64,000 nt of DNA, from positions 248,001 to 312,000 of IMG/VR virus record IMGVR_UViG_3300022602_000024. One strand, 5' to 3'. Both the position numbers and the translations under genes were made by a program. Of this stretch, positions 1,328 through 45,643 are shown piece after piece (within the stretch, counting starts at the first letter, position 1; every line of letters starts with the position of its first letter). Below the pieces are notes generated by a model that made no database searches, had not been told where the DNA came from, and saw only the letters and a list, made by a program, of their open reading frames with translations.

Positions 1328-2452
1328 TTACAAACTAAATCCCTTAAATGTATTGTTGTCTACGTCTTGCTTAGTACCACCAATCACATAAGTTGTAATT
1401 TCTGTTTCTTGTGGTGCCACTTGCACTTCTGATCCAGCAATCCATTTAGCAGTCCAGGGTAAGGGGTTAGAACCAGGCTTGATACCACAGTCTAAGCCTA
1501 CCGCAGTCATACGTTTGCATGCCAACCAATCAACATACTGCGCCAACAGTTGTTCGTTAAGGCCAATCATTGATCCGTCCTTGAACAAGTACTTGGCCCA
1601 GTTCTTTTCTTGCTCAGCAGCAGCCAAGAACATGCGAGTACATTCTTCCTTGGTTTCTGCTTTGATTGCGACATAGTCGGGATCATCCTGAGGCAATAGT
1701 TTCAACAGAGTTTGAGTAGATCCTAAGTGCACATTTTCGTCACGTGCAATTAGTTTAATGATCTTGGCATTGCCTTCCATCTTTTTAAGTTCAGCAAAGG
1801 CCCAACTACAAGCAAAACTCACATAGAAACGTATGCCTTCTAGTGCGTTAACACTATTCAAACACAACCACAGTTTCTTTTTAAGTTCATATGGATCTAC
1901 CACAATAGTTTTGCCATTGACAGAGTGTGTGCCGTAGCCCAACATACGATACCAACCCGATGCTTCAATCAATGAATCATAGTACTTGCTGATGTCTGTG
2001 GCGCAAGCCACAATCTCATCCAGATCCATGAGTTCATCAAACACTTCACTGGGATTGGCATACACATTACGAATAATGTGTGTATAACTACGACTGTGAA
2101 TAGTTTCGTTGAATGCCCAAGTTTCGATCCAAGTTTCCAACTCAGGAATAGTGGCCAAGGGCAAGAATGCCAAGTTGGGACTACGACCTTGAACTGAATC
2201 TAATAGGATTTGTCTTTTGAGATTTGACGTAAAGATATGTTTTTCATATTCACTGAGTTCTTTGAAGTCCTTGGCATCATGTACTACATCTACTTCTTCG
2301 GGTCTCCAGAAGAATCCTAACTGCTTATCTGTTAATTTATCAAATTGTCTGTACTTTAACACATCATACCGTTGAACTGCTGGAGTTCCGTTAGTGTCCA
2401 AAAACGCCAGGCTCTTGGTATGATCTGTTTTCTTAATATTAAATACACTCAT
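1328..2452 (-). CDS. nrdB: Ribonucleotide reductase class Ia beta subunit
   Basis: FFWRPEE, LLDSVQGR, ETIHSRSY, EGIRFYVSF, RDENVH and VAPQETE motifs. Confidence 0.98.
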   Translation of the reverse strand: MSVFNIKKTDHTKSLAFLDTNGTPAVQRYDVLKYRQFDKLTDKQLGFFWRPEEVDVVHDAKDFKELSEYEKHIFTSNLKRQILLDSVQGRSPNLAFLPLATIPELETWIETWAFNETIHSRSYTHIIRNVYANPSEVFDELMDLDEIVACATDISKYYDSLIEASGWYRMLGYGTHSVNGKTIVVDPYELKKKLWLCLNSVNALEGIRFYVSFACSWAFAELKKMEGNAKIIKLIARDENVHLGSTQTLLKLLPQDDPDYVAIKAETKEECTRMFLAAAEQEKNWAKYLFKDGSMIGLNEQLLAQYVDWLACKRMTAVGLDCGIKPGSNPLPWTAKWIAGSEVQVAPQETEITTYVIGGTKQDVDNNTFKGFSL

Positions 2453-2462
2453 TTATAATTCC

Positions 2463-4766
2463 TTAGATTACGCAACTATCACAATCTTCTTGATCCATAG
2501 TTTCATCGATTTGTAATGGATTCTGTGCATTGAGTTTATCAACGTCAATTTCACCCTGACCATCATTGGTGTTAAAGTAGTATAACTGTTTGGCACCATA
2601 TTTGTAACACAACAACAGGTGTTGTAGCATCTCGCTCATTGGAATCTTTTCATCTTCGTAGAAACGTGGATTGTAAGAAGTGTTGGTACTGATACCTTGA
2701 TCAATGTATTTCTGTAGCACTGAACATATTTTCAAATAACCTTCTGGAGATCGTTGATCCCATAACAGTTCGTACTTGTTCTTGAGTTTGCGGAACTCAG
2801 GAACCACCTGTTTCAATACACCGTGCTTGCTTTGCTTGATACTGACATAACTACGTGGTGGTTCGATTCCGTTGGTAGCATTACTTATCTGTGCGCTAGT
2901 CTCGGCAGGCATAATTGCCATCAAAGTTGCATTGCGGATACCAGTGTCCAGAATCTGTTCGCGGAGAGCACGCCAAGGCATACGCTCTTGGTGAGCCACT
3001 AGTTCATCGACTTCTTTCTTACGTGTGTCAATGGGCAAACGCCCATCGGCGTATTTTAAATCAGTCCAACGTGTGCAAGCACCTTGTTCCCGGGCCAAGT
3101 CTGCTGATGCTTTGATCAAGTAATAACTCCATGCTTCGGCATATTCATCTACTAATGCCAATGCAGCAGGATCACTGTAACCAACATCGTTCTTGGCCAG
3201 GAAGTAAGCAAGGTTAATGATACCTACTCCCAATGGACGGAATTCTTTTGTAGCCAATTCAGCAGCTTTGATTGGATAGTTTTGATAACTCAACAATGCA
3301 TCCAGTCCGCGCACTGCCAGTGTGCAAGGCTTTTCAAAGTCTGCAGGCGATTTAACATTGCCCCAGTTGATTGCACTCAATGTACACAAGGCAATACGAC
3401 CTAACTCGTCATTGATATCGTTCAATGGTACTGTAGGCAAGTCAATTTCACCACACAGGTTACTCATCTTAACAGGAGCGATTTCTTCTTTGAAAGGACT
3501 GTGTGTATTTGCATGGTCTACATTTTGCAAATAGATACGACCTGTGTCCTTACGCTCTTGCATAAAACGTGTAAACAAATCAATGGCTTTGAACGTTTTC
3601 TTGCGCAGTTTTGTATTGCGCTCTGCACGCTCGTACAGTTCTTTAAAGCGTTCTTGGTTGTTGAAGAAAGCATCGTACATTTCTGGCACATCGTGGGGGC
3701 TAAAACAGGTAATATCGCCGCCTGTGATGAGTCTTTCGTACATTAATTTGTTGAATTGCACGCCATAATCCATGTGACGTACTCTATTATCCTCTGTGCC
3801 TTTGTTGTTCTTTAAAACCAGGAGATCTTCAATTTCCAAATGCCAGATGGGATAGTAAAGTGTTGCAGCACCATTGCGTACACCGCCTTGACTACATGAA
3901 CGTGTTGCACTCTGGAACAACTTGTAAAAAGGTACTACGCCCGTATGGTAGGCGTCGCCAGACCTGATGGGTGATCCCAACGCCCGAATGCGTCCTGCAC
4001 CGATTCCAATGCCGGCTTTCTGTGATACATACTTGACAATGCTGCTAGCAGTAGCGTTAATGCTATCGAGGCTGTCGTCAGTCTCGATAAGAACACAACT
4101 GCTGAATTGCTTCTGCGGAGTCCTAACACCAGCCATAACCGGAGTTGGTAAGCTAATGTCGCCCATGCTGGTTGCATCATAATAATCCTTTACCCAACGT
4201 AGACGTGTTTCTGTGGGATATGTTTGAAATAGTGTTGCGGCAATCAGCATATAAGCCATTTGCGGAGTTTCAAAGATGTCGCCTGTGACACGGTTTTGTA
4301 CCAAGTACTTGCCGCGCCATTGTTCCATGGCCACATAAGTAAAGTTCTCATCACGTTCGTGCTTGATATAACTGTCAAGTGTATTCCACTCATCTGCGGT
4401 GTAGGCGGCGAGAAGGCCCTTGTCGTAAAAACCATTCTCCACATTACGAGTCACTAATTCTAATAAGCTACAAGGTGTGTAACTGTTATAAACTTGTTTA
4501 CGTAAATGATAGTTGATTAATCTACCGGCTACGTATTGATAGTTAGGGGTTTCTTCGCTAATCAAGTCAGCTGCACTCTTAATAAGAGTTTCTTGAATAT
4601 CACTAGTTTTAATTCCGTTGTAAAATTGAATATGGCTTTTGATTTCTACTTCGCTTGCGCTAACCCCAGTTATTCCCTGTGTGGCCCAAAATACTACTTT
4701 GTGTAGTTTCTCTAAGTTGAGGTCTTCTTTATGACCTTCTCTTTTTGTGACTTGAATTGTCGTCAT
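2463..4766 (-). CDS. nrdA: Ribonucleotide reductase class Ia alpha subunit with ATP cone
   Basis: N-terminal VTKREG ATP cone, QFSSCVL, SNLCGEI, MPAETS, KQLYY and C-terminal CDSC. Confidence 0.98.
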   Translation of the reverse strand: MTTIQVTKREGHKEDLNLEKLHKVVFWATQGITGVSASEVEIKSHIQFYNGIKTSDIQETLIKSAADLISEETPNYQYVAGRLINYHLRKQVYNSYTPCSLLELVTRNVENGFYDKGLLAAYTADEWNTLDSYIKHERDENFTYVAMEQWRGKYLVQNRVTGDIFETPQMAYMLIAATLFQTYPTETRLRWVKDYYDATSMGDISLPTPVMAGVRTPQKQFSSCVLIETDDSLDSINATASSIVKYVSQKAGIGIGAGRIRALGSPIRSGDAYHTGVVPFYKLFQSATRSCSQGGVRNGAATLYYPIWHLEIEDLLVLKNNKGTEDNRVRHMDYGVQFNKLMYERLITGGDITCFSPHDVPEMYDAFFNNQERFKELYERAERNTKLRKKTFKAIDLFTRFMQERKDTGRIYLQNVDHANTHSPFKEEIAPVKMSNLCGEIDLPTVPLNDINDELGRIALCTLSAINWGNVKSPADFEKPCTLAVRGLDALLSYQNYPIKAAELATKEFRPLGVGIINLAYFLAKNDVGYSDPAALALVDEYAEAWSYYLIKASADLAREQGACTRWTDLKYADGRLPIDTRKKEVDELVAHQERMPWRALREQILDTGIRNATLMAIMPAETSAQISNATNGIEPPRSYVSIKQSKHGVLKQVVPEFRKLKNKYELLWDQRSPEGYLKICSVLQKYIDQGISTNTSYNPRFYEDEKIPMSEMLQHLLLCYKYGAKQLYYFNTNDGQGEIDVDKLNAQNPLQIDETMDQEDCDSCVI

Positions 4767-8909: not shown

Positions 8910-10228
8910 CGGTTGAAATATAGCGAAACTGGTTTACTAATATTTACGTTTGCTAGTTTATTATTAAAGTTTGATTTATCATCATCAGTCAATAAACTAT
9001 ATAGCTTGGAATTTAAAATAGAAAATTGTGTATTGGTTCTGATATCAAATTCAGCAGTGAAATTTAAATAAAAATTCCATAAATCATCATTGTCATCCCA
9101 TACATCCAATTCATTGATAGTTGCAGAAATAAATCCCTGCATTACCCTTGTTTTGTCTAGGTACCTATCAAATATTGGGTGAGCAGAACACTCTTTAAGT
9201 ATTGCTTTAAGTCCATTCCTATATCTAACTGGTAATGCTTGTATATCTAAGAAATTTGTTCTTTCAACCAAGGTAGTATTTAAAAATGTTATACTTTCAT
9301 TGGCATTAAACCAACCATACCAGTAATCTAGATATTCTTTTATGTAAAATATATTATTAAGACTAAAAACAGGATCTAAAGAAAAATCAAATTGTCTACG
9401 ACTATCAATAGATAAAAAAGATTTTTTAAATTCTAGCATTCGAGTTAGATTATTTTCAATTTTACTAAACTTAACCGGCCATCGAACATATTGATAGTTG
9501 TCGCCCACACTATCAATGCTCATGCCAAACCATATGCTTTTAAATTGCAAAAAGTAGTTTAATAACTCTTCTGACAGATTGACACTTAATGCAGTACTCA
9601 ATTTGATTCCGATACGTGGCGCCAGGCCTTGATCGATGCACCATTTTAATAATTTAAGGGCACCTGGTTGTATTAATGTTTCACCGCCTATTAAAAATAA
9701 ATGAAAAAATTTACAGTCGTTTACTTTATTGATAATATTGGTAGTGATAAAATTCCAATATTCATCTATTTCTGTTATATCTTGCGATAAGAAATCAGAG
9801 TCTGTATTGTTGGTTATCTTAGCAAAGGTAGTACTATCATACGTACTACAACTTCTACAACTCAGGCTGCAAAAGTTACTAAATTTAATTCTAAGTTCTG
9901 TGTTCCTGTTGTAATCAAATGGAAATTCGTTGGCGTTAAGTGCAATTATTGATCGGATACGCTCGGACTGCCCTCCGTGCAATTCTTCATTTTTGCACCT
10001 CCAACATGCAGCAGGAAGATATCCCTGCTCCATAGAACTTTTGATTTCCTTAAAGGGGTCATCTATATGAGAAATTGTAAATTTATTTGTATCAACATTA
10101 CAACAACAAATAATATCCATCTTTGCAGGATTACTACTATGACGTCTTACATCTGTTGTATTGTAAGGAAAAGGGCAGAAACTGGGATTATTTTTAGCCC
10201 ACTCTATTCTTTCATTGACTGTCTGCAT
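8906..10228 (-). CDS. Radical SAM protein with N-terminal twitch/SPASM-like Cys cluster
   Basis: CPFPY...CC...[12 protein letters not shown] and GGET; AT-rich; lies between iscU and iscA. Confidence 0.88.
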
Positions 10229-10605
10229 GTTTCTTTCGATAGTCTTCGACCGCGGCCTTTATGGCATCTTCGGCGAGGATACTGCAATGGATTTTAACAG
10301 GCGGCAAAGCCAACTCATTTGCAATGTCCGAGTTTTTGATTGTTGCAGCTGCATCCAATGTCTTGCCCTTGACCCACTCTGTAACAAGTGAGCTACTCGC
10401 GATAGCTGATCCGCATCCATAGGTTTTAAATCTTGCATCTGTGATAATCCCATCTTTAACTTTGATTTGGAGTCTCATTACATCTCCGTTAACCGCAAGC
10501 TGGGGCACCGACTAAGCCGGTCCCAACTTGCGCATCTCCTTTATCAAAAGTTCCCACATTTCGGGGATTTTCAAAATGATCTATTACATCTTTACTGTAA
10601 GCCAT
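10212..10605 (-). CDS. iscU: Fe-S scaffold IscU interrupted by a 7-nt insertion containing TAA (recoded gene or pseudogene)
   Basis: ATG at 10605 gives MAYSKDVIDHFENPRNVG...GAPACG then TAA (10489-10491). The gene resumes in the +1 frame as GDVMRLQIKV...YGCGSAIASSS...LPPVKIHCSILAEDA. Removing 7 nt gives a 128-aa IscU. Confidence 0.9.
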
Positions 10606-11359: not shown

Positions 11360-11462
11360 TTTGTTCTTCCCAAAGTTTAATGGCTTCCCAATAAGAAGCC
11401 CATACACAATTTTCGCAACCACGCCCACAACATGTTGTGGGCTCTTGTGGTTTAGGATACAT
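11337..11462 (-). CDS. 41-aa Cys-rich microprotein of the oxidoreductase-like N-terminal domain type; absent from the ORF track
   Basis: MYPKPQEPTTCCGRGCENCVWASYWEAIKLWEEQNETSEIN; matches the P..P..CCGxGCxxCVW..Y pattern; ATG overlaps the upstream TAA. Confidence 0.8.
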   Translation of the reverse strand: MYPKPQEPTTCCGRGCENCVWASYWEAIKLWEEQNETSEIN

Positions 11463-11782
11463 TAATTGGGAACCGCAACAACTTGCTTAACGCCAGTCTG
11501 TGGATTTACCATCTCTTGCCAGTGATAACCTACAGGTGGTGCTTGTACAACTGTTTGTGGTTGTTGCACAATAACTGGTTGTTGCTCAACAACTACATTA
11601 TTCGGTTGAGCTAGTTCATATCCAACTACACCGCCGATTAGTGCAGGAGCAACCCAACATCCGCCGCAACCATAGCCACCGTGATAATACCCACCGTGCC
11701 ATCCAAATGCACGATATGGGCCATGTGCTGATGCCGCTTGAAAAACAGATATTAACGATAATGCTAATAGTAATTTTTTCAT
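11462..11782 (-). CDS. Secreted or membrane Gly-rich protein
   Basis: Signal peptide MKKLLLALSLISVFQAASA, Gly/His/Tyr-rich segment and WVAPALIGGVVGY; AGGAG Shine-Dalgarno. Confidence 0.75.
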   Translation of the reverse strand: MKKLLLALSLISVFQAASAHGPYRAFGWHGGYYHGGYGCGGCWVAPALIGGVVGYELAQPNNVVVEQQPVIVQQPQTVVQAPPVGYHWQEMVNPQTGVKQVVAVPN

Positions 11783-11840: not shown

Positions 11841-12275
11841 TTATGCGCCAGCGGCACGTTTGGCCATGCCACTTACGATCTTGCTGGGATCTCCGGCTGG
11901 TGCGCCATGGGCACCCAGGGGATCTGAATCGTCTACTGTGTTTTCTGGTGGTGTTAGATACACATACTTTTCACCAGTGTGATGATCATCGTCGATGCTT
12001 TTGATCATGCCTTTAACAGTTTCATTATCTTTTTGTGCTTTGTCTAATGCAGCATAGTTGAACTGTTCATTGCCGGGAATGGCACGAACACGATCAATAA
12101 CTGTGTCAACTTTAACTCTTGGAGTAACTGCCGAGCTTTCAGCGGCTTCACTACGAAGCCACTCAAGAGTAGATATTAACGCAGCATCGCCACGTGTATC
12201 TGCTTCGTCTTCGATTGCAGACGCTTCCACATCTGCATCAAATTCGCTTTCAAAGATAATTTCTTTAATACGCAT
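11841..12275 (-). CDS. Acidic hypothetical protein, putative head/internal protein
   Basis: N-terminus MRIKEIIFESE; lies in the late gene block. Confidence 0.65.
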   Translation of the reverse strand: MRIKEIIFESEFDADVEASAIEDEADTRGDAALISTLEWLRSEAAESSAVTPRVKVDTVIDRVRAIPGNEQFNYAALDKAQKDNETVKGMIKSIDDDHHTGEKYVYLTPPENTVDDSDPLGAHGAPAGDPSKIVSGMAKRAAGA

Positions 12276-12276
12276 A

Positions 12277-12984
12277 TTAACGACGTGTGCGTCCTAAGTC
12301 TGCGCTACCACCAACTGCTGCATCTGTAGCGGCAAATTGATCTGCACCTGCGTCCAAATCAGCACCACCATCAGCGTCTAGATCACTTTCAGGAGCACCT
12401 AACTCAGCACCGCCCTCAAGGCCTTGGTCTATACCACCTAGGTTCATATCGCCTTGGCCAACTTGTTCACCAGCCAATGTACGGCTAGCATTGTCTGCCG
12501 ACTCACGACCAGAAGTCATGCAATCATACAAACTCTTTAGTACAGGACCAATGGCAGTTTTAAATGCTTCGGCTTGTTCCATGCCAATTTGGTCACGGAT
12601 TGTGTCTACCAGTGCAGGCACTTGTTCGTTTTGCATCTTGGAAACTTTTTCCAACATGTCTTGAATTGAGTCAACAATGTCTTTAGCAGCTAGTACAGCT
12701 TCGCTTTTGCCCATTTCGCTTTCGAATAGGCCTTGCTCACTGTTCAACCATTTGTCTAAGCCTTCTTTGACCAGCATTAGTTCCATGTACTTTGGATTCT
12801 TTTCTGCTGTGTGGCTACCAAAACTACGTTTGATTGCGGTGATATTTTCGCTTAACGCTCGGCTCAAACGTTGTGCTTTTGCATAGGACAAATTATCATA
12901 ATCAATGCTGAAGCCAAAACGACTTTCAGTGATTTTGTTAATTTTTTGTGGCGTTACCGCAGTATGCATTTCAGAGAGTCTCAT
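12277..12984 (-). CDS. Putative prohead core/scaffold-like protein
   Basis: Helical and acidic with a low-complexity C-terminus; start MRLSEM preferred, downstream of a TAAATA motif. Confidence 0.55.
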   Translation of the reverse strand: MRLSEMHTAVTPQKINKITESRFGFSIDYDNLSYAKAQRLSRALSENITAIKRSFGSHTAEKNPKYMELMLVKEGLDKWLNSEQGLFESEMGKSEAVLAAKDIVDSIQDMLEKVSKMQNEQVPALVDTIRDQIGMEQAEAFKTAIGPVLKSLYDCMTSGRESADNASRTLAGEQVGQGDMNLGGIDQGLEGGAELGAPESDLDADGGADLDAGADQFAATDAAVGGSADLGRTRR

Positions 12985-12989
12985 AGTGT

Positions 12990-13517
12990 TTATTCCCAAA
13001 CTTTATTATATTTAGCATGTGTATGTATTTTCGATATTTTGTCCCGAGCAATTTCTAACTGTTTCTGTGCAATTTCTAGCCTTGACTGTCTAATATCCAC
13101 AATTTCGTAGTCTTTTTTTGTTCTTGCCCGGCGTTGACTATTTTGCATAGCCAACACATCTGCATAATTTTTATTTATTTCTTTGTCCAGGGCAATGATT
13201 TCATCTGCCCGGCGTATGTTGTTTTTCATGAGATATACTGCATACAGTATAGCACTGATCTTGTTGTCAAATGTGTGTATGAATTCTCTGTTGGGATCTT
13301 GCACTTCGCAAGTTCGATTCTTGTTTAAAATCAGTGTGTAAAGACCGACTCGGTATCCGTTCTTCAGGGGAATACACAAAGGAGCAGACTGCGCAATTCT
13401 TGCCAGTTCTTTAGTGGTCCAATATGTGATATAGCCAGCCGCTTGGTCAACAAATTCGCTAACCGCCGGGGGCATTGTGTCTTTATTTGATTTTTTTCGT
13501 GTACGTGATCTGGCCAT
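12990..13517 (-). CDS. Hypothetical protein
   Basis: 175-aa ORF with a coiled-coil C-terminus. Confidence 0.7.
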   Translation of the reverse strand: MARSRTRKKSNKDTMPPAVSEFVDQAAGYITYWTTKELARIAQSAPLCIPLKNGYRVGLYTLILNKNRTCEVQDPNREFIHTFDNKISAILYAVYLMKNNIRRADEIIALDKEINKNYADVLAMQNSQRRARTKKDYEIVDIRQSRLEIAQKQLEIARDKISKIHTHAKYNKVWE

Positions 13518-13692
13518 TTTGATTGCGACGCAACAAGATATCTTGTGTGGTTAGTTGATTTGCTATTAGTTGTTCTCGTTCATTGAGACTATTTTTTGAT
13601 ACTGTGGGCTCATGGTCAAAACGACCCAACAAGTCTGCTTGCTCGTTGTTGATAGGCACATGTACTCTATTGAGTAGTTCTACAATTTTCAT
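13483..13692 (-). CDS. Hypothetical protein
   Basis: 69 aa, starts MKIVELL, ATGA-coupled to the upstream gene. Confidence 0.7.
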   Translation of the reverse strand: MKIVELLNRVHVPINNEQADLLGRFDHEPTVSKNSLNEREQLIANQLTTQDILLRRNQNGQITYTKKIK

Positions 13693-13946
13693 TTAAAATG
13701 TGTTGCTAATAATGTTATGATACCGGCGATCATAACACCTAAAATACTTGTGCCGATAGCGATTATTGTTTTATAAGGGCCATTGGCTTTTTCAGTTAGG
13801 GATTCTTTGATGTCAACCAAGTGACCTTCTAACTTGTCCATCCGGTCTTCCAGATTGTTAAGTTTAGTTTCCAAACTGCTATACCTTTCAGCGCATAATT
13901 CTACGTGCGCTTCTAGGCTTTTCTTTTCAATATCCGTACCGGCCAT
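13689..13946 (-). CDS. Coiled-coil protein with one C-terminal TM helix (holin/haemolysin-XhlA-like architecture)
   Basis: Heptad repeats LETKLNNLEDRMDKLE, then hydrophobic IIAIGTSILGVMIAGIITLL. Confidence 0.65.
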   Translation of the reverse strand: MAGTDIEKKSLEAHVELCAERYSSLETKLNNLEDRMDKLEGHLVDIKESLTEKANGPYKTIIAIGTSILGVMIAGIITLLATHFK

Positions 13947-14047
13947 TTTTGTTAATCTTTCTGAGGTGGCGATGCTATTAGTTTTAGTATGCCTTAAAAA
14001 TGAGCCTTAATTATGAGCCTGAGTGGTGCCGTAGCATCAACTATTAT

Positions 14048-14485
14048 TTAGCTGATTTCGCTCTGAACCACATATATGTTCTTGATGCTGCCGTAAGGAT
14101 AGAATATGGGCAACATGAATCTTGCAGTTTCTTCTAAGCCACACACAATAGGTACCTGTTCCAGGTCCTGCAGTAACCCGCCCATTGGGCTGTTAGGCAA
14201 GTCATAGATCCCGTGTTTTTCAACTGCCCACGACCATGTCCAAACAGTCTGGGGTCGCATGTTGTAGAATTCGCCAAATCTGGTACGAGCAATTTCTACA
14301 TTTTGATAGATAATGGGTTCTTGTATGTGCAGGGGTTGAGTACGTAAACCAATGCATTGCAATACTGTTTCCCAGTTGCGTTGTTGATTACGACGTATAT
14401 CATCAGGATCCGAGCTACGTATTACACTAGTGGCAGTAATGTCTACCAATGTATAACCTTTAAAAAATTGTAGTCCTGTGTCCAT
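14048..14485 (-). CDS. Conserved phage hypothetical protein
   Basis: YTLVDIT and RNQQRNWETVLQCIGLR; start moved to the ATG 7 nt after TAAATA (14493-14498). Confidence 0.7.
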   Translation of the reverse strand: MDTGLQFFKGYTLVDITATSVIRSSDPDDIRRNQQRNWETVLQCIGLRTQPLHIQEPIIYQNVEIARTRFGEFYNMRPQTVWTWSWAVEKHGIYDLPNSPMGGLLQDLEQVPIVCGLEETARFMLPIFYPYGSIKNIYVVQSEIS

Positions 14486-14505
14486 GATATAGTATTTATC
14501 GGCCA

Positions 14506-14537
14506 TAAAAAAAGCACTCCTAGAAGTGCTTCTTTTA
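14506..14537 (-). terminator. Rho-independent terminator
   Basis: AAGCACTTCTAGGAGTGCTT hairpin followed by a T-run on the minus strand. Confidence 0.8.
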
Positions 14538-14555
14538 TTTTAACTACACTACTGA

Positions 14556-15011
14556 TTAGGAAGTAGCTAGTTTGAAGTTTACAGAACCAACAACAGTAGC
14601 TGTGTTAGCCCAAATATTACCAGTACCATTACCGATGTTAGCAGTTAAACCTTGGATACGTGTTTGTAATGCTGAAGCAACTGTAGTTGCAGTATAACCA
14701 GAACCTGCAGTAGCAGCAGTGTCAGTACCAGCACCAGATGCTTCTAACAGAATACTGATAGAACCACTGTTAACTTGATACATTGTGATTGTACTGTCAA
14801 CTGCGATAGCACGTAGAATTGTTTCTACTGAACCACCTGTTGCCATATCACCAGCTGCAAAAGTTTGTTGTGAACCAGTTACAACAGAAATTGCGATTGG
14901 GTTCTTTGTCAAACCTGTTGAAATAATACCGCCAAGACCTGCTTGTGCTGTTGCTGAATCGACGTTTACTACGCCATATGAGTCACCTACGTAACGTGTT
15001 TGGATTGCCAT
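14556..15011 (-). CDS. Putative abundant virion structural protein
   Basis: Ala/Thr/Gly-rich; has its own late promoter, a 5' TACGC-GAAA-GCGTA hairpin, an AAGGA SD and a terminator. Confidence 0.6.
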   Translation of the reverse strand: MAIQTRYVGDSYGVVNVDSATAQAGLGGIISTGLTKNPIAISVVTGSQQTFAAGDMATGGSVETILRAIAVDSTITMYQVNSGSISILLEASGAGTDTAATAGSGYTATTVASALQTRIQGLTANIGNGTGNIWANTATVVGSVNFKLATS

Positions 15012-15089
15012 TTTATTTTCCTTTATAAATGTTTACGCTTTCGCGTATGTAAATATTTATGATTTGCGGAAAAAAACGGTATTTTATGC

Positions 15090-16184
15090 TTACTTTGCAA
15101 ACAAGGCTGCACTAAAAGTACCACGGTTTACCAGTTTAACCAGCCCTTGCGGTGTGTTAAACACAAAACCTTCGCCAGCAGGTTTACCATTTACACTTTG
15201 TTGTATACCTTGTACCTGGCGTTCAAGTTGATCTGCTAGGTTTACTTTCAGGGCATATAAACTATTCCATATTGTAAATAGTCCGTTTAGACCTTTGCGA
15301 TTCCTATACAAGTATCCACCTTGGTTATCCCCAATCAAGGATTTGATCTGCTTTGCACTGATTTTGTTAGCAGGATCTTGCAACCAGTCAACCAATTCCA
15401 AGTTAGTTTGACCAGTAATACGTTTATTCATATAGCGTTGTATTGCTTGACGTATTACACCATCTAGTCCTGATAAGAAACTGTCTGCTACTGCACCGTA
15501 CTGGCTGACTGCGTTTTTAGCAGCTTTGGATAACTGCACAGGATCATCCAATTTAAAATTTAATCCGGCGCTGGGTGTTAGTATAACCACCAAGCCATCA
15601 CGTTTGAGTCCTTGCCCAGTCCATTGTACAGGTTTTGCCCCATCATTGGCAAAGTATTGATGCACCACTACTCCGCCTATGCTACGACCAATCTGTTGCC
15701 CTAATGCTGATTTAACCGGAATACGGTATTCTACCACATTGGGCTTGAATTCGTACATGCCTTTAACAGGAGCAAGTCGCTGATACCATAATAAATCGCC
15801 CCAAAAGAATCCAGAGCTTGTACCTACTGCTTCTTCTAATCCTGCCCAAATGTTTTGTAGTTTTGCATACAGGTCTGGACGTAGTCGGCCTGATGCTTTT
15901 TTGCTATCGTATTCTTGCCACCGTGCAGGACTATCTGCAAAGAACTTTGTATCAAACATGTATTTGTCTTGTACAGTAAAACGACCATCAGGCAAACGTC
16001 CAAATATCAATGCAGGAAATCCGTCCCACTTGATAGTAACACTCTGTGGATTTTTAATAACATACTCCAAACTGGCCAAGGCTTGTTGTGCGGCTGCCGC
16101 TCCATCAAATATGCTATCTTCAGGGTGTGGTTGTGCTCCAGTGCGAGCCTCTACCAGCATGTTATTGATAAAATCCAACTTCAT
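15090..16184 (-). CDS. RNA-ligase-like / ATP-grasp nucleotidyltransferase-fold protein
   Basis: Motif I TIKWDG, WGDL, motif IV GEGFV and motif V LVKLV. Confidence 0.65.
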   Translation of the reverse strand: MKLDFINNMLVEARTGAQPHPEDSIFDGAAAAQQALASLEYVIKNPQSVTIKWDGFPALIFGRLPDGRFTVQDKYMFDTKFFADSPARWQEYDSKKASGRLRPDLYAKLQNIWAGLEEAVGTSSGFFWGDLLWYQRLAPVKGMYEFKPNVVEYRIPVKSALGQQIGRSIGGVVVHQYFANDGAKPVQWTGQGLKRDGLVVILTPSAGLNFKLDDPVQLSKAAKNAVSQYGAVADSFLSGLDGVIRQAIQRYMNKRITGQTNLELVDWLQDPANKISAKQIKSLIGDNQGGYLYRNRKGLNGLFTIWNSLYALKVNLADQLERQVQGIQQSVNGKPAGEGFVFNTPQGLVKLVNRGTFSAALFAK

Positions 16185-16954
16185 ACTATGTGCCCCATTT
16201 TACGGAACCAGGCTGCAGTACCAGGTGCATGGTCTTCGGGCAGGGTCAACAAACCTTTGGCTTGATCTTGACGTGCCTGTGCTAGTTTTGCTTCGCGGTC
16301 AGGATCGTTGGCCAAGGCTTTCATTACAGTGGCAACACTGTTTAGGTCTTCGGCTTTTGCTTTGGGATTCAACAACAGTTTAGCTGCGGCTTGACGATTG
16401 TCAGCAACAACTTCATTGTTGTCCCGACGTAGTACTGTACCACCGAAGGCATCAACTTTGACTCCTAGTGCTTTACCAATACTGTTTAACAATATAAACA
16501 ATTGACTGGCCTTGAAGTTAGGGTCATCATACATGCCACGTGGACCATGTTGGTGCCAGTCTGCCACTTTGGCAGCGTTGGGTATGATCATATAATCCAC
16601 TTGTGCAAATGCTTCTCGCCCGTCGGCGTTCTTATAAGGAATGTCTGCATGTACATTACGTCCTTTGACCACTGCAGGAATTTTCTGTGCCGCAAGGTGT
16701 GTTTGTAGGGCTTTTTTGGCCTGTGCAGGATCATCAACACCGTAGTTTTTTAATGTGATTGCTTGATCAATGAATAAGTCAATGTCTCCAGATTTTACTT
16801 TAAACCCAGCTGACCCAATATCTTTAATAACATGGTTTTGTAGTGCAGGTGGTAATAGTCGACGTGCAATTTCTACCACAGTTGGTACATCTTGTTTTAA
16901 TACATCCGTGGTATTGTCAAAGATGGTATGGCTGCTTTCATATACGTACATCAT
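16181..16954 (-). CDS. Pol-beta-superfamily nucleotidyltransferase
   Basis: IGSAG..KSGDIDL and a third acidic residue in QVDYM. Confidence 0.72.
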   Translation of the reverse strand: MMYVYESSHTIFDNTTDVLKQDVPTVVEIARRLLPPALQNHVIKDIGSAGFKVKSGDIDLFIDQAITLKNYGVDDPAQAKKALQTHLAAQKIPAVVKGRNVHADIPYKNADGREAFAQVDYMIIPNAAKVADWHQHGPRGMYDDPNFKASQLFILLNSIGKALGVKVDAFGGTVLRRDNNEVVADNRQAAAKLLLNPKAKAEDLNSVATVMKALANDPDREAKLAQARQDQAKGLLTLPEDHAPGTAAWFRKMGHIV

Positions 16955-17463
16955 AATGCGTGGACTGGTTCTTCTTTTACTTTGCCAAGCTCAGCAGCTT
17001 GGTCATAATACTTGTTAATCTTGCTGATGCTAGTGGAAAGTTTAACTGGGAATAGCCCAGTCTTTGAATCTTTTTTAACTTGCCCTTGTAAATGTTTAGG
17101 GAGTCTAGTTAAGTAATACCCATCCTGTCTTATAATAACATCAATTGTCGGCTCTTCAGGGTACGGAAACCTATATTGTGTTTCATTGTCGGGTAATGTT
17201 TTACTTATATCATTAATTGGTTGAGTTGGCGCAGTTGATACAGGTGGTTGAGTTGGTGCAGTTTGAGCTTGGTCTTTTGGAACCCATTTATTTTGAGCAC
17301 TGTTAAATGACCAATTCTTGTTGTTTGGTCCAGTCCATTGTTGTCCATTTGTTGGATTTAGTGGAATTTGTCGAGATTTATTATAGGATGCGCCCTTGGC
17401 AACCTGTCCAATTTTGCTAAGTGTATCATACCAACTCTCACTTATTATTTCATTAATCTTCAC
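16951..17463 (-). CDS. Hypothetical protein, putative internal head protein
   Basis: GTG start gives MKINEIISES and overlaps the stop of the upstream ORF. Confidence 0.65.
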   Translation of the reverse strand: MKINEIISESWYDTLSKIGQVAKGASYNKSRQIPLNPTNGQQWTGPNNKNWSFNSAQNKWVPKDQAQTAPTQPPVSTAPTQPINDISKTLPDNETQYRFPYPEEPTIDVIIRQDGYYLTRLPKHLQGQVKKDSKTGLFPVKLSTSISKINKYYDQAAELGKVKEEPVHAL

Positions 17464-17701
17464 TGCGCATTCTCCTGACACCGCGACGGAATTTATCGGG
17501 TTCTTGCGTGCGAATGCTGTTAAGTAATCTACGCTCCAACTCTCCGGCTTGTTCAGCATCGTAGTTTTCGCGGATATAGTTTATCAAGTTGATAGCACCT
17601 TGTATTACATGACTGGCCCTACTTTCCACAAGATTTTCACGATCTTTGTGGGTCAGCATGGTGTCTAATTCGTCAAGTATGCTACGAGCTCGCTTTTGCA
17701 A
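17453..17701 (-). CDS. Conserved phage hypothetical protein
   Basis: 82 aa, TTG start with a GGAG SD, downstream of a TAAATA late motif. Confidence 0.75.
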   Translation of the reverse strand: MQKRARSILDELDTMLTHKDRENLVESRASHVIQGAINLINYIRENYDAEQAGELERRLLNSIRTQEPDKFRRGVRRMRSED

Positions 17702-17725
17702 GATTTACTCCAATTTATGTTATAT

Positions 17726-18694
17726 TTATGTTGGGTTAGCAAGTTCCGGGAATACAGTACGCCAGTTAGTGCCTCTGCGTTTATCGCATTTGTCTAAAAA
17801 ATCAAGTGCTTTTTGTTTGTTTTTATACCCTGAGGAAAATATACCCATAACAGGTTGTTGTCTATGTTCGATTTTATCTCCAAGTCTGTTTTCGTTAAAA
17901 TTACTAACCAGCCACAAATTTAGATTATCAAGATTTGCTTGATTTAAAATACCCACAGATGTATTAACGTTAAACATACAATTTACAGGGCTATTATCAA
18001 TGTACCATTGTAAATTATCCGTTACCTGATTCCAGATAGCAGGAAATCTTTGGTACTCAAATCTTTCTCCTATGTCATCAATGCTAAAATCAAGTTGAAC
18101 TAATTTAAATTTACTCCACAAATCTAATAATTCAGCCGATGGCAAAATAGTTCCATTGGTATTATAATCTAGTTCAACTTGTGATTTATGAGGAATTGTC
18201 TGTAAAAAAGTTATATGTTCTTTACTAAGCAATGGTTCGCCACCATTAAAATGAATTAGCCTCAGAGAGCTTGTGTCAAGAGTTTTCCAGAATTGATTTA
18301 CGGATAATTTTTTAATTGGCAAATTTAATTCTTGTTTCCAAGAACTGCTATTTTGCGGACCGCATATTACGCATCTTAGGTTACATGTGTCCCCGGTCCA
18401 ATAGTCTATTTTTGCCAACTCAACATCAGTATTGGTTAAATTTTGACTTTTATACCAGTTGTTTACATTTATTCTTCGGCTGGACCAACCAGACTCTTCT
18501 GTAGATTTACAGGCGCTACATGAACTTGGAAAATTTCCAGTTAGCCATGTTGTTCTTACTTCATTTAAAAACGAATCTTGGTGGAAATTAATGGTATCGG
18601 CTGTATTAGCAGGAGATAAACAACAAGTAGAAAAAGATTGTTGATTATTTTGATACACTATGTTTAAATTTTTAAATGCATCGTAACAAATCAT
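17726..18694 (-). CDS. Radical SAM protein with twitch-like N-terminus
   Basis: CC...CSAC, CNLRCVIC, FNGGEPL, YNTNGT, FSIDD and YQRFP. Confidence 0.9.
   Translation of the reverse strand: MICYDAFKNLNIVYQNNQQSFSTCCLSPANTADTINFHQDSFLNEVRTTWLTGNFPSSCSACKSTEESGWSSRRINVNNWYKSQNLTNTDVELAKIDYWTGDTCNLRCVICGPQNSSSWKQELNLPIKKLSVNQFWKTLDTSSLRLIHFNGGEPLLSKEHITFLQTIPHKSQVELDYNTNGTILPSAELLDLWSKFKLVQLDFSIDDIGERFEYQRFPAIWNQVTDNLQWYIDNSPVNCMFNVNTSVGILNQANLDNLNLWLVSNFNENRLGDKIEHRQQPVMGIFSSGYKNKQKALDFLDKCDKRRGTNWRTVFPELANPT

Positions 18695-43725: not shown

Positions 43726-45643
<1,918 letters not shown>

What the first reader, a model, noticed from the sequence alone, without database searches (positions are those of the whole stretch)
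11841..17463. Shared N-terminal M-[KR]-[IL]-x-E motif suggests capsid-packaged proteins, including two nucleotidyltransferases
Seen: N-termini MRIKEIIFESE, MRLSEM, MKIVELL and MKINEIISES, plus looser MKLDFINNMLVEA and MMYVYES, in one late-promoter block. Established: T4 internal proteins carry short N-terminal capsid-targeting peptides cleaved after Glu by the prohead protease. Inference: the RNA-ligase-like KxDG protein (15090) and the Pol-beta NTase (16181) may be packaged and injected as a ready-made RNA repair or anti-defence pair.
Basis: inference. Interest (0 to 1): 0.6.

Follow-up and report, generated by a model that had tools for sequence, protein, structure and literature searches.

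The report
Capsid-targeting leader on jumbo-phage proteins
A 354-kb T4-like jumbo phage puts a short, conserved N-terminal "address label" ending in a protease site on otherwise unrelated proteins. In a cultured relative, proteins with this label are mostly found in the virion, so the label probably marks proteins loaded into the head, perhaps including a mini DNA-polymerase-X-like enzyme.

Summary

**The leader.** Four of them (MRIKEIIFES, MKINEIISES, MKIVELL, MRLSEM) belong to a leader M-[KR]-[IL]-x-[ED]-[IVLMF]; the full form continues [IL]-x-E.
- It is enriched at N-termini: 5-6 found against 0.9 expected.
- It is conserved as protein, with synonymous codon changes.
- It stays fixed on a hypervariable gene slot, as at the T4 internal-protein locus.

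**Support for capsid targeting.**
- The genome encodes gp23, a gp21-type prohead protease and gp22/67/68-like core proteins.
- In the relative PA5oct, 7 of 9-10 leader-bearing genes are virion proteins by mass spectrometry, against 93 of 461 genes overall (P about 3e-4 to 8e-4).

**The two enzymes.**
- The "Pol-beta NTase" is a minimal family-X polymerase fold. Its best match is ASFV Pol X (Z 10.4). Its N-terminus does not fit the leader, but its PA5oct homologue is virion-associated.
- The KxDG protein (DUF6267) has a ligase-type adenylyltransferase fold (Z 5-7). It carries an appended, disordered N-terminal extension ending in L-x-E. Its leader match is only borderline, and its possible PA5oct counterpart was not detected in virions.

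**Not shown.** Packaging and cleavage in this phage are inferred. An RNA-repair role is unsupported; DNA gap-filling plus sealing fits the folds better.

The parts
17453..17701 (-). g82: conserved 82-aa protein (TTG start, GGAG RBS) that opens the block; homologue of PA5oct EST35_0225
   Evidence: blastp 1e-22 to EST35_0225
17723..17729 (-). ATAAATA late-promoter-like core upstream of g82
16951..17463 (-). g170: gene in the hypervariable slot. GTG start, leader MKINEIISE|S, body of unknown function.
   Evidence: Every related locus has a gene here starting (V/M)KI[NK][ED][IV]. The bodies are 102-262 aa, and only 15 of 91 pairs are detectably similar. No Pfam family.
17437..17463 (-). 9-codon leader of g170 (M-K-I-N-E-I-I-S-E), ending in I-x-E
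16181..16954 (-). g257: minimal family-X-polymerase-like nucleotidyltransferase (palm + thumb). GS motif G46-S47; acidic triad D56, D58, D119. Short N-terminal MYVYE precedes the fold. Conserved C-terminal tail LPE..PGTAAWFRKxGH.
   Evidence: Alignment A1. AF2 model pLDDT 83.5. Foldseek: Pol lambda/mu, E about 3e-5. VIA-align: ASFV Pol X Z 10.4, rmsd 3.0, 156 residues aligned (chain of 176). hhalign to the PA5oct virion protein EST35_0231: 92%, E 7e-7.
15090..16184 (-). g364: DUF6267 protein with a ligase/capping-type adenylyltransferase fold. Motif I K52-W-D-G; EGFVF at 338-342; K350. Helical insert about 216-323; no OB domain. The N-terminal 17 residues are a disordered extension ending L-V-E12|A.
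   Evidence: Pfam PF19782 5e-30. Alignment A2. AF2 pLDDT 88.7, residues 1-17 below 50. VIA-align: 19 of the top 20 matches are RNA/DNA ligases, Z 5.3-7.2. The extension is absent from the cyanophage homologue.
15054..15060 (-). ATAAATA late-promoter-like core upstream of g151
14556..15011 (-). g151: conserved 151-aa protein without a leader (MAIQTRY...), function unknown
   Evidence: no family
14048..14506 (-). g152: homologue of PA5oct virion protein EST35_0234, no leader
   Evidence: blastp 4e-7; ESI-MS/MS flag
13689..13946 (-). g85: coiled-coil protein with a C-terminal membrane helix, XhlA/hemolysin-like
   Evidence: phrog_1193 2.5e-6; weak PF10779
13483..13692 (-). g69: 69-aa protein with the short leader form MKIVE|LL; matches a PHROG annotated as virion structural protein
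   Evidence: phrog_16215 2e-4; N-terminus invariant in 24 loci; homologue in phage Phosso starts MRFYEI
12990..13517 (-). g175: basic 175-aa protein without a leader
12277..12984 (-). g235: MRLSE|M leader; homologue of PA5oct virion protein EST35_0237
   Evidence: phrog_14154 9e-13; blastp 8e-11; ESI-MS/MS flag
13009..13015 (-). CTAAATA late-promoter-like core upstream of g235
11841..12275 (-). g144: acidic 144-aa protein with the full leader MRIKEIIFE|S. Positional counterpart of PA5oct virion protein EST35_0238 (VKIKDILVES) and Phosso MRLSEIINES.
   Evidence: In related loci the protein in this position keeps MRIxEIIxE[SD] even where the rest is about 32-35% identical. Codon analysis. PA5oct and Phosso.

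Best explanation
**Setting.** The window lies in a 354-kb T4-like jumbo myophage. It belongs to the clade that includes Pseudomonas phage PA5oct, Sinorhizobium phage Phosso and Vibrio phage 2.275.O.

**The leader.** Its genes carry an N-terminal leader of about 9 residues: M-[KR]-[IL]-x-[ED]-[IVLMF]-[IL]-x-E, followed by a small residue. [quoted passage not shown]
1. Late in infection, the leader docks the protein onto the scaffolding core (gp22/gp67/gp68-like) of the assembling prohead.
2. The gp21-family serine protease then cuts after the Glu of the [IL]-x-E site.
3. The mature protein stays free inside the head and leaves with the DNA.

**Leader-bearing genes in the block 11841-17701.**
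- g170 sits in a hypervariable slot, analogous to the T4 IP locus, and is likely under arms-race selection.
- g144 carries the full leader. g235 and g69 carry a shorter form ending [IL]-x-E at residue 5.

**The two enzymes.**
- g257 is a minimal Pol X-like nucleotidyltransferase. It is probably a virion passenger too, because its PA5oct homologue is virion-associated and sister phages carry a second NTase with a canonical leader (MKIRDIILE|GG).
- g364 is ligase-like. It carries an appended, disordered L-x-E-terminated extension and may be packaged at low copy.
- If both are delivered, the most economical job is gap-filling plus nick-sealing on the incoming DNA, as ASFV Pol X and ligase do. This fits better than RNA repair.

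**Shown:** the motif, its conservation, the protease, the folds, and the PA5oct virion association.
**Inferred:** targeting, cleavage, injection, and substrate.
For: **T4-type head machinery is present.**
- gp23 (PF07068, 7e-99).
- Peptidase_S77 (gp21), 4.8e-26.
- gp22-, gp67- and gp68-like genes homologous to PA5oct gp153, gp150 and gp151.

**The leader is conserved.**
- It is shared by non-homologous proteins here and in 28 related loci.
- It is invariant on a slot gene whose bodies are mostly unalignable (15 of 91 pairs), while the flanking genes are about 49-97% identical.
- Amino acids are conserved through synonymous and K/R codon changes.
- Positions 7 (I) and 9 (E) are fixed and position 8 is free, which mirrors the T4 L/I-X-E rule (rule from PMC9026906).

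**PA5oct virion association.**
- Leader-bearing annotated starts gp150 (gp67-like), gp175, gp205, gp230, gp238, gp380 and gp381 are all flagged ESI-MS/MS. gp75, gp382 and (by an alternative start) gp271 are not.
- That is 7 of 9-10 against 93 of 461 overall, hypergeometric P 3e-4 to 8e-4.

**The block is syntenic with PA5oct EST35_0225-0241, which lies upstream of RNR.** Homologies:
- g82 to 0225.
- g235 to 0237 (MS).
- g152 to 0234 (MS).
- g257 to 0231 (MS).

**Other support.**
- Phosso's syntenic block also has the leaders MKAIEILSES and MRLSEIINES.
- The g364 N-terminus is disordered (pLDDT below 50 for residues 1-17).
- E12 of g364 is invariant, with L at P3 and a free P2, even in two homologues with a 4-residue deletion.
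- The g364 extension is missing from the cyanophage DUF6267 protein.
- Late-promoter cores flank the block.
- The T4 precedent of diverse internal proteins sharing only a CTS is stated in PMC3012670.
Against: - There are no proteomic or N-terminal data for this phage. Everything about packaging is transferred from PA5oct, whose MS list also includes non-structural enzymes such as RNR.
- The regex was derived from the data.
- g257's N-terminus does not match the leader profile (rank 180-295 of 441). Its PA5oct homologue starts directly at the mature-like SGN, so it enters virions (if it does) without this leader.
- g364 matches only marginally (rank 17, z 1.8).
- The possible PA5oct counterpart gp228 (KIDG motif, MNIAEIQ start) was not MS-detected. 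Its homology to g364 is limited to motifs IV-V.
- The cyanophage DUF6267 gene sits in a replication module and is not annotated as a virion protein.
- The short forms (g69, g235) score weakly in leave-one-out tests.
Confidence: 0.68

Rival explanations
1. The leader is real and is a prohead-core address. But the tagged proteins are scaffold or core accessories like T4 gp67/gp68, which are degraded or stay as structural debris. They would not be injected effectors. The two enzymes would be ordinary intracellular late DNA-repair or replication proteins that are not packaged.
For: - The same leader sits on the gp67-like core protein of PA5oct.
- g69 and g144 are small, acidic or helical proteins.
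- g257 lacks the leader.
- PA5oct gp228 was not detected in virions.
- Cyanophage DUF6267 lies beside DNA polymerase, UvsX and the helicase.
Against: - PA5oct gp231, the g257 homologue, is MS-detected.
- Sister phages carry an NTase with a canonical leader.
- Large multi-domain enzymes elsewhere in the genome also carry the leader: amidoligase, and deaminase+GNAT.
- The hypervariable slot behaves like an arms-race locus, not a scaffold part.
Confidence: 0.2
2. The N-terminal pattern is not a protein signal. It would be a by-product of A/T-rich, Lys-rich translation-initiation regions of highly expressed late genes. Its link to virion proteins would then only reflect late, high expression.
For: - MK- starts are common.
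- The leader codons are A/T-rich.
- All the genes sit behind late-promoter-like motifs.
- The MS-detected set is dominated by late genes.
Against: - K and R interchange through unrelated codons (AAA against CGT).
- I, E and D are kept through synonymous changes, while position 8 is free.
- Most late structural genes (portal, MCP, tail genes, g151, g152) lack the pattern.
- The pattern ends in a protease-site-like [IL]-x-E.
- It is retained across PA5oct, Phosso and this phage despite different codon usage.
Confidence: 0.06
3. One reading: the ligase-like protein and the NTase are an injected RNA-repair pair, for example to reseal tRNAs cut by host anticodon nucleases, as T4 Rnl1/Pnkp do.
For: - The g364 fold matches RNA ligases (Naegleria Rnl, T4 Rnl2, REL1) about as well as DNA ligases.
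- Pol-beta NTases include CCA-adding and tailing enzymes (lower ranks).
Against: - g257 aligns over palm plus thumb with family-X DNA polymerases (Z 9-10.4, 156-176 residues). With RNA-specific NTases it aligns only over the palm (about 95 residues, Z 8.3 or less).
- I saw no kinase/phosphatase end-healing partner in the block.
- Packaging of g364 is uncertain.
Confidence: 0.12

Closest known systems
Capsid-targeting sequence (CTS) of the phage T4 internal proteins IPI/IPII/IPIII and Alt, removed by the gp21 prohead protease
   Same: - A short N-terminal peptide of about 10 residues, shared by otherwise unrelated proteins.
- It ends in [L/I]-X-Glu.
- The phage encodes a gp21-family protease and gp22/67/68-type core proteins.
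- One locus combines a fixed leader with a hypervariable body.
(PMC9026906, PMC3012670)
   Different: - The consensus differs (M-K/R-I-x-E/D-I-I-x-E).
- The host phage is a distant jumbo clade (Arenbergviridae-like), not Tevenvirinae.
- The cargo includes large enzymes.
- Targeting and cleavage have not been demonstrated.
- I made no sequence comparison with the T4 CTS itself.
Virion-associated proteins of Pseudomonas phage PA5oct (EST35_0226-0241, 0150, 0175, 0205, 0380, 0381; Lood et al. 2020, PMC7318152)
   Same: - A syntenic block upstream of ribonucleotide reductase.
- Homologues of g82, g235, g152 and g257.
- The same leader on seven MS-detected proteins.

   Different: - PA5oct proteins are 25-45% identical at best.
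- The order of the NTase and the ligase-like gene differs.
- The PA5oct NTase has no leader.
- In the passages I searched, the PA5oct paper has no hit for 'N-terminal' and mentions 'cleav-' only for a cell-wall hydrolase.
African swine fever virus Pol X (pO174L, PDB 5HR9), a minimal family-X polymerase
   Same: - Best structural match to g257: Z 10.4, rmsd 3.0 A, 156 residues aligned (chain of 176).
- Palm and thumb only; no fingers or 8-kDa domain.
- A ligase(-like) gene is also encoded by the same virus.

   Different: - 11% sequence identity.
- g257 has an extra C-terminal region of about 50 residues with an invariant tail.
- Activity and template use are unknown.
- This is a bacterial virus.
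ATP-dependent polynucleotide ligases: adenylyltransferase domain (T4 Rnl2, Naegleria RNA ligase, Lig IV, T4/T7 DNA ligases); Pfam DUF6267
   Same: - Invariant KxDG motif I.
- EGFV and K-containing C-terminal strands.
- 19 of the top 20 structural matches are ligases.

   Different: - Z is only 5.3-7.2, and Foldseek finds nothing significant.
- A roughly 110-residue helical insert; no OB or other C-terminal domain.
- No sequence-level match to any solved ligase.
- In cyanophage S-PM2 the family is fused to a cytidylyltransferase-like domain.

Membership tests
T4-type capsid-targeting propeptide (CTS) | Short N-terminal peptide shared by proteins that are otherwise unrelated | tested here: met
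   g144, g170, g235, g69, the 136-aa and 650-aa proteins elsewhere in the genome, and an extra NTase in relatives; slot-gene bodies mostly unalignable
T4-type capsid-targeting propeptide (CTS) | Ends in an L/I-X-Glu site for the prohead protease | tested here: met
   Positions 7-9 are I-x-E, with x free and E fixed in 14 of 15 g144 orthologues. The slot genes have I/V/M-x-E or I-T-E. This is a sequence pattern only.
T4-type capsid-targeting propeptide (CTS) | Phage encodes a gp21-family protease and a gp22/gp67/gp68-type core | tested here: met
   PF03420, 89 bits; homology to PA5oct gp150-153
T4-type capsid-targeting propeptide (CTS) | Leader-bearing proteins are present in virions | tested here: inconclusive
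   Met only by proxy: 7 of 9-10 leader-bearing PA5oct genes carry ESI-MS/MS flags. There are no data for this phage.
T4-type capsid-targeting propeptide (CTS) | Leader is cleaved off, and is necessary and sufficient for encapsidation | not testable with these tools
   Needs N-terminal proteomics and fusion experiments.
T4-type capsid-targeting propeptide (CTS) | g364 and g257 carry the leader | tested here: inconclusive
   g364 ranks 17th of 441 (z 1.8) and has a disordered, appended L-x-E extension. g257 ranks 180-295th, i.e. not met for g257.
Family X DNA polymerase / Pol-beta NTase superfamily (g257) | hG[GS] motif plus DxD and a third acidic residue | tested here: met
   Invariant G46-S47, D56-I-D58 and D119 in 22 sequences
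Family X DNA polymerase / Pol-beta NTase superfamily (g257) | Palm + thumb architecture of Pol X enzymes | tested here: met
   The top 8 VIA matches are all family X (Z 9.0-10.4, 156-176 aligned). Other NTases align over the palm only. Foldseek: Pol lambda/mu, E about 3e-5.
Family X DNA polymerase / Pol-beta NTase superfamily (g257) | Fingers and 8-kDa dRP-lyase domains of canonical Pol beta/lambda | tested here: not met
   Only 256 aa. Alignments cover only the palm-thumb of the targets. ASFV Pol X lacks these domains too.
Family X DNA polymerase / Pol-beta NTase superfamily (g257) | Template-directed dNTP incorporation | not testable with these tools
   Biochemical assay needed.
ATP-dependent ligase / capping covalent nucleotidyltransferases (g364) | Motif I KxDG with the catalytic lysine | tested here: met
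   K52, D54 and G55 invariant in 19 sequences; also in S-PM2d138
ATP-dependent ligase / capping covalent nucleotidyltransferases (g364) | Adenylyltransferase fold with motifs III, IV and V | tested here: inconclusive
   19 of the top 20 VIA matches are ligases, but Z is 5.3-7.2 and Foldseek E is 0.09 or worse. I assigned GDLL, EGFVF and K350 by eye.
ATP-dependent ligase / capping covalent nucleotidyltransferases (g364) | OB-fold or other nucleic-acid-binding C-terminal domain | tested here: not met
   The model shows the NTase domain plus a helical insert only.
Pfam DUF6267 | Match above the gathering threshold | tested here: met
   PF19782, 105.6 bits against a cut-off of 27

The most novel reading that the evidence does not exclude
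A whole clade of T4-related jumbo phages (PA5oct, Phosso, and these freshwater 350-kb phages) uses a recognisable 9-residue address label to load a large, fast-evolving enzyme arsenal into the head. That arsenal would include a ready-made DNA gap-filling and sealing kit (mini Pol X plus a DUF6267 ligase-like enzyme). The kit would act on the incoming genome before any phage gene is expressed. This would be a bacterial-virus counterpart of the virion-borne repair enzymes of ASFV.
Probability: 0.2. Interest if true: 0.8.

Novelty: new variant of a known kind. Interest (0 to 1): 0.6.

Why it matters
If the leader is a capsid address, the injected proteome of an entire, mostly uncultured jumbo-phage clade can be read directly from sequence.
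- The hypervariable slot gene and the leader-tagged multi-domain enzymes become prime candidates for new anti-defence factors.
- It would extend the T4 capsid-targeting principle far outside the T-even phages.
- It would offer a natural tag for loading cargo into very large capsids.
- A virion-borne Pol X-like enzyme would be an unusual passenger for a bacterial virus.
- It would give the uncharacterised family DUF6267 a testable role.

Tried and rejected
- **Nucleotide search.** Megablast of the block against cultured phages found nothing.
- **tblastn against cultured phages.** g257 and g152 found nothing. g235 hit only Xanthomonas phage XaC1, weakly. g69 hit only Phosso.
- **Pfam.** No family for g144, g170, g257, g151, g152, ten slot variants, the extra NTase, or PA5oct gp227-231.
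- **Solved structures.** A sequence-profile search with the g364 alignment gave only noise. Foldseek with the g364 model gave nothing significant. The ligase assignment rests on VIA-align and motif I.
- **Complex prediction.** g364 with g257 returned 'no answer' (score 0.00). This is neither for nor against binding.
- **Rosetta-stone idea.** I tested whether the 591-aa S-PM2 DUF6267 protein is a ligase-PolX fusion. It is not; its C-terminal domain is cytidylyltransferase-like.
- **Weak homologies.** hhalign of the extra 338-aa NTase against g257 was not significant, so I call it an NTase from its GS / GDIDL / VQVDFM motifs only. hhalign of g364 against PA5oct gp228 matched only motifs IV-V, so that orthology stays uncertain. 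PA5oct has no tblastn match to g364 and no phrog_16215 match.
- **Literature.** No supplementary tables are held for the PA5oct paper, so peptide coverage of N-termini could not be checked. No paper mentions DUF6267.
- **Left out.** I did not score T4's own CTS peptides against the leader profile.
- **Not used.** The large protein-representatives search and the reads tools, because no claim here rests on absence of relatives or on expression.

Full report
**What is there.**
The window is bases 248001-312000 of a 354,429-bp IMG/VR virus record, estimated 98% complete. The finding covers a run of minus-strand genes. In order of transcription they are:
- g82 (17453-17701)
- g170 (16951-17463)
- g257 (16181-16954)
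- g364 (15090-16184)
- g151, g152, g85
- g69 (13483-13692)
- g175
- g235 (12277-12984)
- g144 (11841-12275)

MKINEIISES needs a GTG start at 17463. That start has an AGGAG 8 nt upstream, and a GTG or ATG is kept at the same place in 13 related loci. The heptamer ATAAATA, the core of the T4 late promoter, is the most enriched word upstream of genes in this genome: 40 genes against 3 expected. It occurs four times on the coding strand of the block, once as CTAAATA. So 'one late-promoter block' is fair.

**What kind of phage.**
The genome encodes:
- a gp23-type major capsid protein (PF07068, 7e-99);
- a gp21-type prohead protease (Peptidase_S77, 4.8e-26);
- portal, gp67-like, gp68-like and gp22-like genes in T4 order.

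By capsid protein its closest cultured relatives are Vibrio phage 2.275.O (70%), Sinorhizobium phage Phosso (69%) and Pseudomonas phage PA5oct (67%). Hundreds of close homologues of g257 and g364 sit on metagenomic contigs of up to about 360 kb. The phage therefore belongs to a large, mostly uncultured jumbo clade.

**Is the motif more than chance?**
- M[KR][IL]xE occurs at 5-6 of 443 predicted N-termini against 0.9 expected from column shuffles (P about 8e-4). After internal Met the rate is 0.15%. This test is partly circular, so I looked for independent evidence.
- In 28 related loci the block is syntenic. The protein in the g144 position keeps MRIxEIIxE[SD] even where the rest of the protein is only 32-35% identical.
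- The slot upstream of g257 always holds a gene that starts (V/M)KI[NK][ED][IV]. The bodies are 102-262 residues long, and only 15 of 91 pairs are detectably similar. The flanking genes are about 49-97% identical.
- At codon level, K and R alternate through unrelated codons, and I, E and D are held through synonymous changes. Position 8 is free while I7 and E9 are fixed. That is protein-level selection on a pattern ending in I-x-E.
- A profile built from 14 leader families ranks g170, g144, a 136-aa protein (genome 344007-344417), a 650-aa protein (genome 126360-128312) and g235 at the top of 441 N-termini. It also brings up a second cluster at genome 126-137 kb.

**Does it mean 'packaged'?**
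Established knowledge:
- T4 gp21 cuts after L/I-X-Glu.
- The first 10 residues of IPIII suffice for encapsidation.
- T-even internal proteins are diverse and share only this capsid-targeting sequence (PMC9026906 and PMC3012670).

The best available test was the published virion proteome of PA5oct, with 93 of 461 gene products (PMC7318152), as flagged in its GenBank record.
- I applied the regex I had already used on the related loci to the whole PA5oct genome. I then read the annotation at each hit.
- Of the annotated starts that bear the leader, these are ESI-MS/MS-positive: gp150, gp175, gp205, gp230, gp238 (VKIKDILVES), gp380 and gp381.
- gp150 is the gp67-like head-core protein and starts MKINDIITEG.
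- gp75 and gp382 are not positive, and gp271 bears the leader only from an alternative start.
- That is 7 of 9-10 against a 20% background, P 3e-4 to 8e-4.
- The PA5oct block EST35_0225-0241, just upstream of ribonucleotide reductase, is syntenic with the window block and consists mostly of MS-flagged 'structural proteins'. Homologies are g82 to 0225 (1e-22), g235 to 0237 (8e-11) and g152 to 0234 (4e-7).
- Phosso's syntenic block also starts genes with MKAIEILSES and MRLSEIINES.

I conclude that the leader is a clade-wide head-targeting signal of the T4 CTS kind. Cleavage and injection remain inferences.

**The two enzymes.**

*g257.*
- It has invariant GS, DxD and a third Asp.
- Its AlphaFold model (pLDDT 83.5) matches family-X polymerases over palm plus thumb: ASFV Pol X at Z 10.4, rmsd 3.0 A, 156 residues aligned (chain of 176). 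Next come Pol beta palm-thumb, TdT, Pol lambda and Thermus PolX.
- RNA-specific NTases and CD-NTases align only over the palm (Foldseek). It is therefore a minimal Pol X-like enzyme, not just 'a Pol-beta NTase'.
- Its N-terminus (MYVYE, then the fold) does not match the leader profile.
- Its PA5oct homologue gp231 (hhalign 92%, E 7e-7) starts directly at the equivalent of the residue after that Glu, and it is MS-positive.
- Several sister phages carry an additional 321-339-aa NTase (GS ... GDIDL ... VQVDFM) between g257 and g364, with a canonical leader MKIRDIILE|GG.

*g364.*
- It belongs to DUF6267.
- It has an invariant KWDG.
- Its model (pLDDT 88.7) has 19 polynucleotide ligases among its 20 best structural matches. 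The Z scores are modest (5.3-7.2), and Foldseek alone was not significant.
- Residues 1-17 are disordered in the model.
- E12 is invariant, with L at P3 and a variable P2. Two homologues with a 4-residue deletion still read L-K-E or I-T-E.
- The cyanophage S-PM2 homologue starts directly at the fold, without this extension.
- This fits a propeptide. However, the first half of the extension is out of register with the canonical leader (rank 17 of 441).
- The only candidate PA5oct counterpart is gp228 (KIDG motif, MNIAEIQ start). It was not MS-detected, and its homology to g364 is weak.

**How it most likely works.**
1. Late transcription produces the proteins.
2. The amphipathic leader binds the gp22/67/68-type core of the prohead.
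3. The gp21-type protease cuts after E9 of the full form, or after E5 of the short form. In the g144 family position 5 alternates E and D, while position 9 is E in 14 of 15 sequences. In T4, Asp at the cleavage position blocks processing but not targeting. This argues that E9 is the cut site.
4. The mature proteins ride in with the DNA.

For the enzymes, a Pol X-like gap-filler next to a ligase-like sealer suggests repair or processing of the incoming DNA. This is an inference from folds. RNA repair is not excluded but is less well supported. The prediction of a g257-g364 complex gave no answer.

**Confidence.**

| Claim | Confidence |
|---|---|
| Leader is a head-targeting propeptide | about 0.7 |
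| g257 is virion-borne | about 0.55 |
| g364 is virion-borne | about 0.35-0.4 |
| The two enzymes are a DNA repair pair | about 0.3 |

**Novelty.**
The principle is known from T4. The papers I could search pair 'capsid targeting' or 'propeptide' only with T4 and phiKZ/SPN3US-type phages, not with PA5oct or RaK2-type phages. In the passages I searched, the PA5oct paper does not discuss N-terminal leaders. I therefore rate this a new variant of a known kind. It has a new consensus and sits in a distant jumbo clade. Its predicted cargo is unusual: a Pol X-like NTase, possibly a DUF6267 ligase-like enzyme, a hypervariable slot protein and, elsewhere in the genome, leader-like starts on amidoligase, deaminase-GNAT and PGDYG multi-domain proteins.

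**Compliance with the operators' notes.**
No other genetic code was needed. No reads tools were used.

Noticed in passing
Outside the window: genome G000:C1:126360-137752, minus strand (loci L035, L055): A second cluster of genes with leader-like N-termini:
- MKITEF, 650 aa, Amidoligase_2.
- MQTKEIL, 654 aa, dCMP/cytidine deaminase + GNAT.
- MRASDFLIEG, 127 aa, weak M91/DUF6647.
- MKFEEIVTE, DUF6321.
- MLLNDIV, 705 aa.
- MKPTEFVTE, 651 aa, weak PGDYG.
- MYITELSE, 362 aa, with a GRFQPFHKGHH cytidylyltransferase-type motif.

The domain mix recalls the injected 'polyvalent proteins' of Iyer et al. 2017.
   Followed up: partly
Related loci L011:7039-8001, L015:6988-8001, L024:6985-8001, L027:2066-3079, L028:856-1869: Sister phages carry an extra 321-339-aa Pol-beta-type NTase (GS, GDIDL, VQVDFM motifs) between the g257 and g364 orthologues. 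It has a canonical leader MKIRDIILE followed by GG. The gene is absent from the window.
   Followed up: partly
L001:5863-7638 (Synechococcus phage S-PM2, S-PM2d138): The cyanophage DUF6267 protein is fused to a C-terminal cytidylyltransferase-like (HxGH) domain. It lies in the replication module next to DNA polymerase, UvsX, gp41 and MazG. This hints that DUF6267 works with a second nucleotidyltransferase in other phages as well.
   Followed up: partly
window 16181-16260 (C-terminus of g257): The last ~20 residues of g257 (L-P-E, then PGTAAWFRKxGH) are nearly invariant across 22 homologues but are modelled with low confidence. They could be a docking peptide or a C-terminal propeptide, since L-P-E fits the protease motif.
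   Followed up: no
window 10212-10605, minus strand: An IscU-like Fe-S scaffold gene is split into two ORFs by an in-frame TAA and a frame change at about 10490-10500 (…APACG* / GDVMRLQIK…). This could be a pseudogene, an assembly error or recoding. It sits among HesB/IscA-like and radical-SAM-like genes.
   Followed up: partly
window 43726-45643, minus strand: From the N-terminal translations alone (no family scan was run), the phage appears to carry GroEL-like (539 aa) and GroES-like (95 aa) chaperonin genes. The window also holds ribonucleotide reductase alpha/beta-like genes (1328-4766) and many sugar-modification-type genes (46-56 kb).
   Followed up: no
window 11462-11782 and 13689-13946, minus strand: Two non-leader genes in or next to the block look membrane-directed. 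One is a 106-aa Gly/Tyr-rich protein with a signal-peptide-like start (MKKLLLALSLISVFQAASA). The other is an XhlA/hemolysin-like coiled-coil protein with a C-terminal transmembrane helix.
   Followed up: no
L034:2525-3865 (PA5oct EST35_0228): This PA5oct 'hypothetical protein' has H-L-D-N, a KIDG motif I and an EGYV...KIV motif IV-V like DUF6267, yet it misses the Pfam model. It is probably an unrecognised ligase-like relative.
   Followed up: partly
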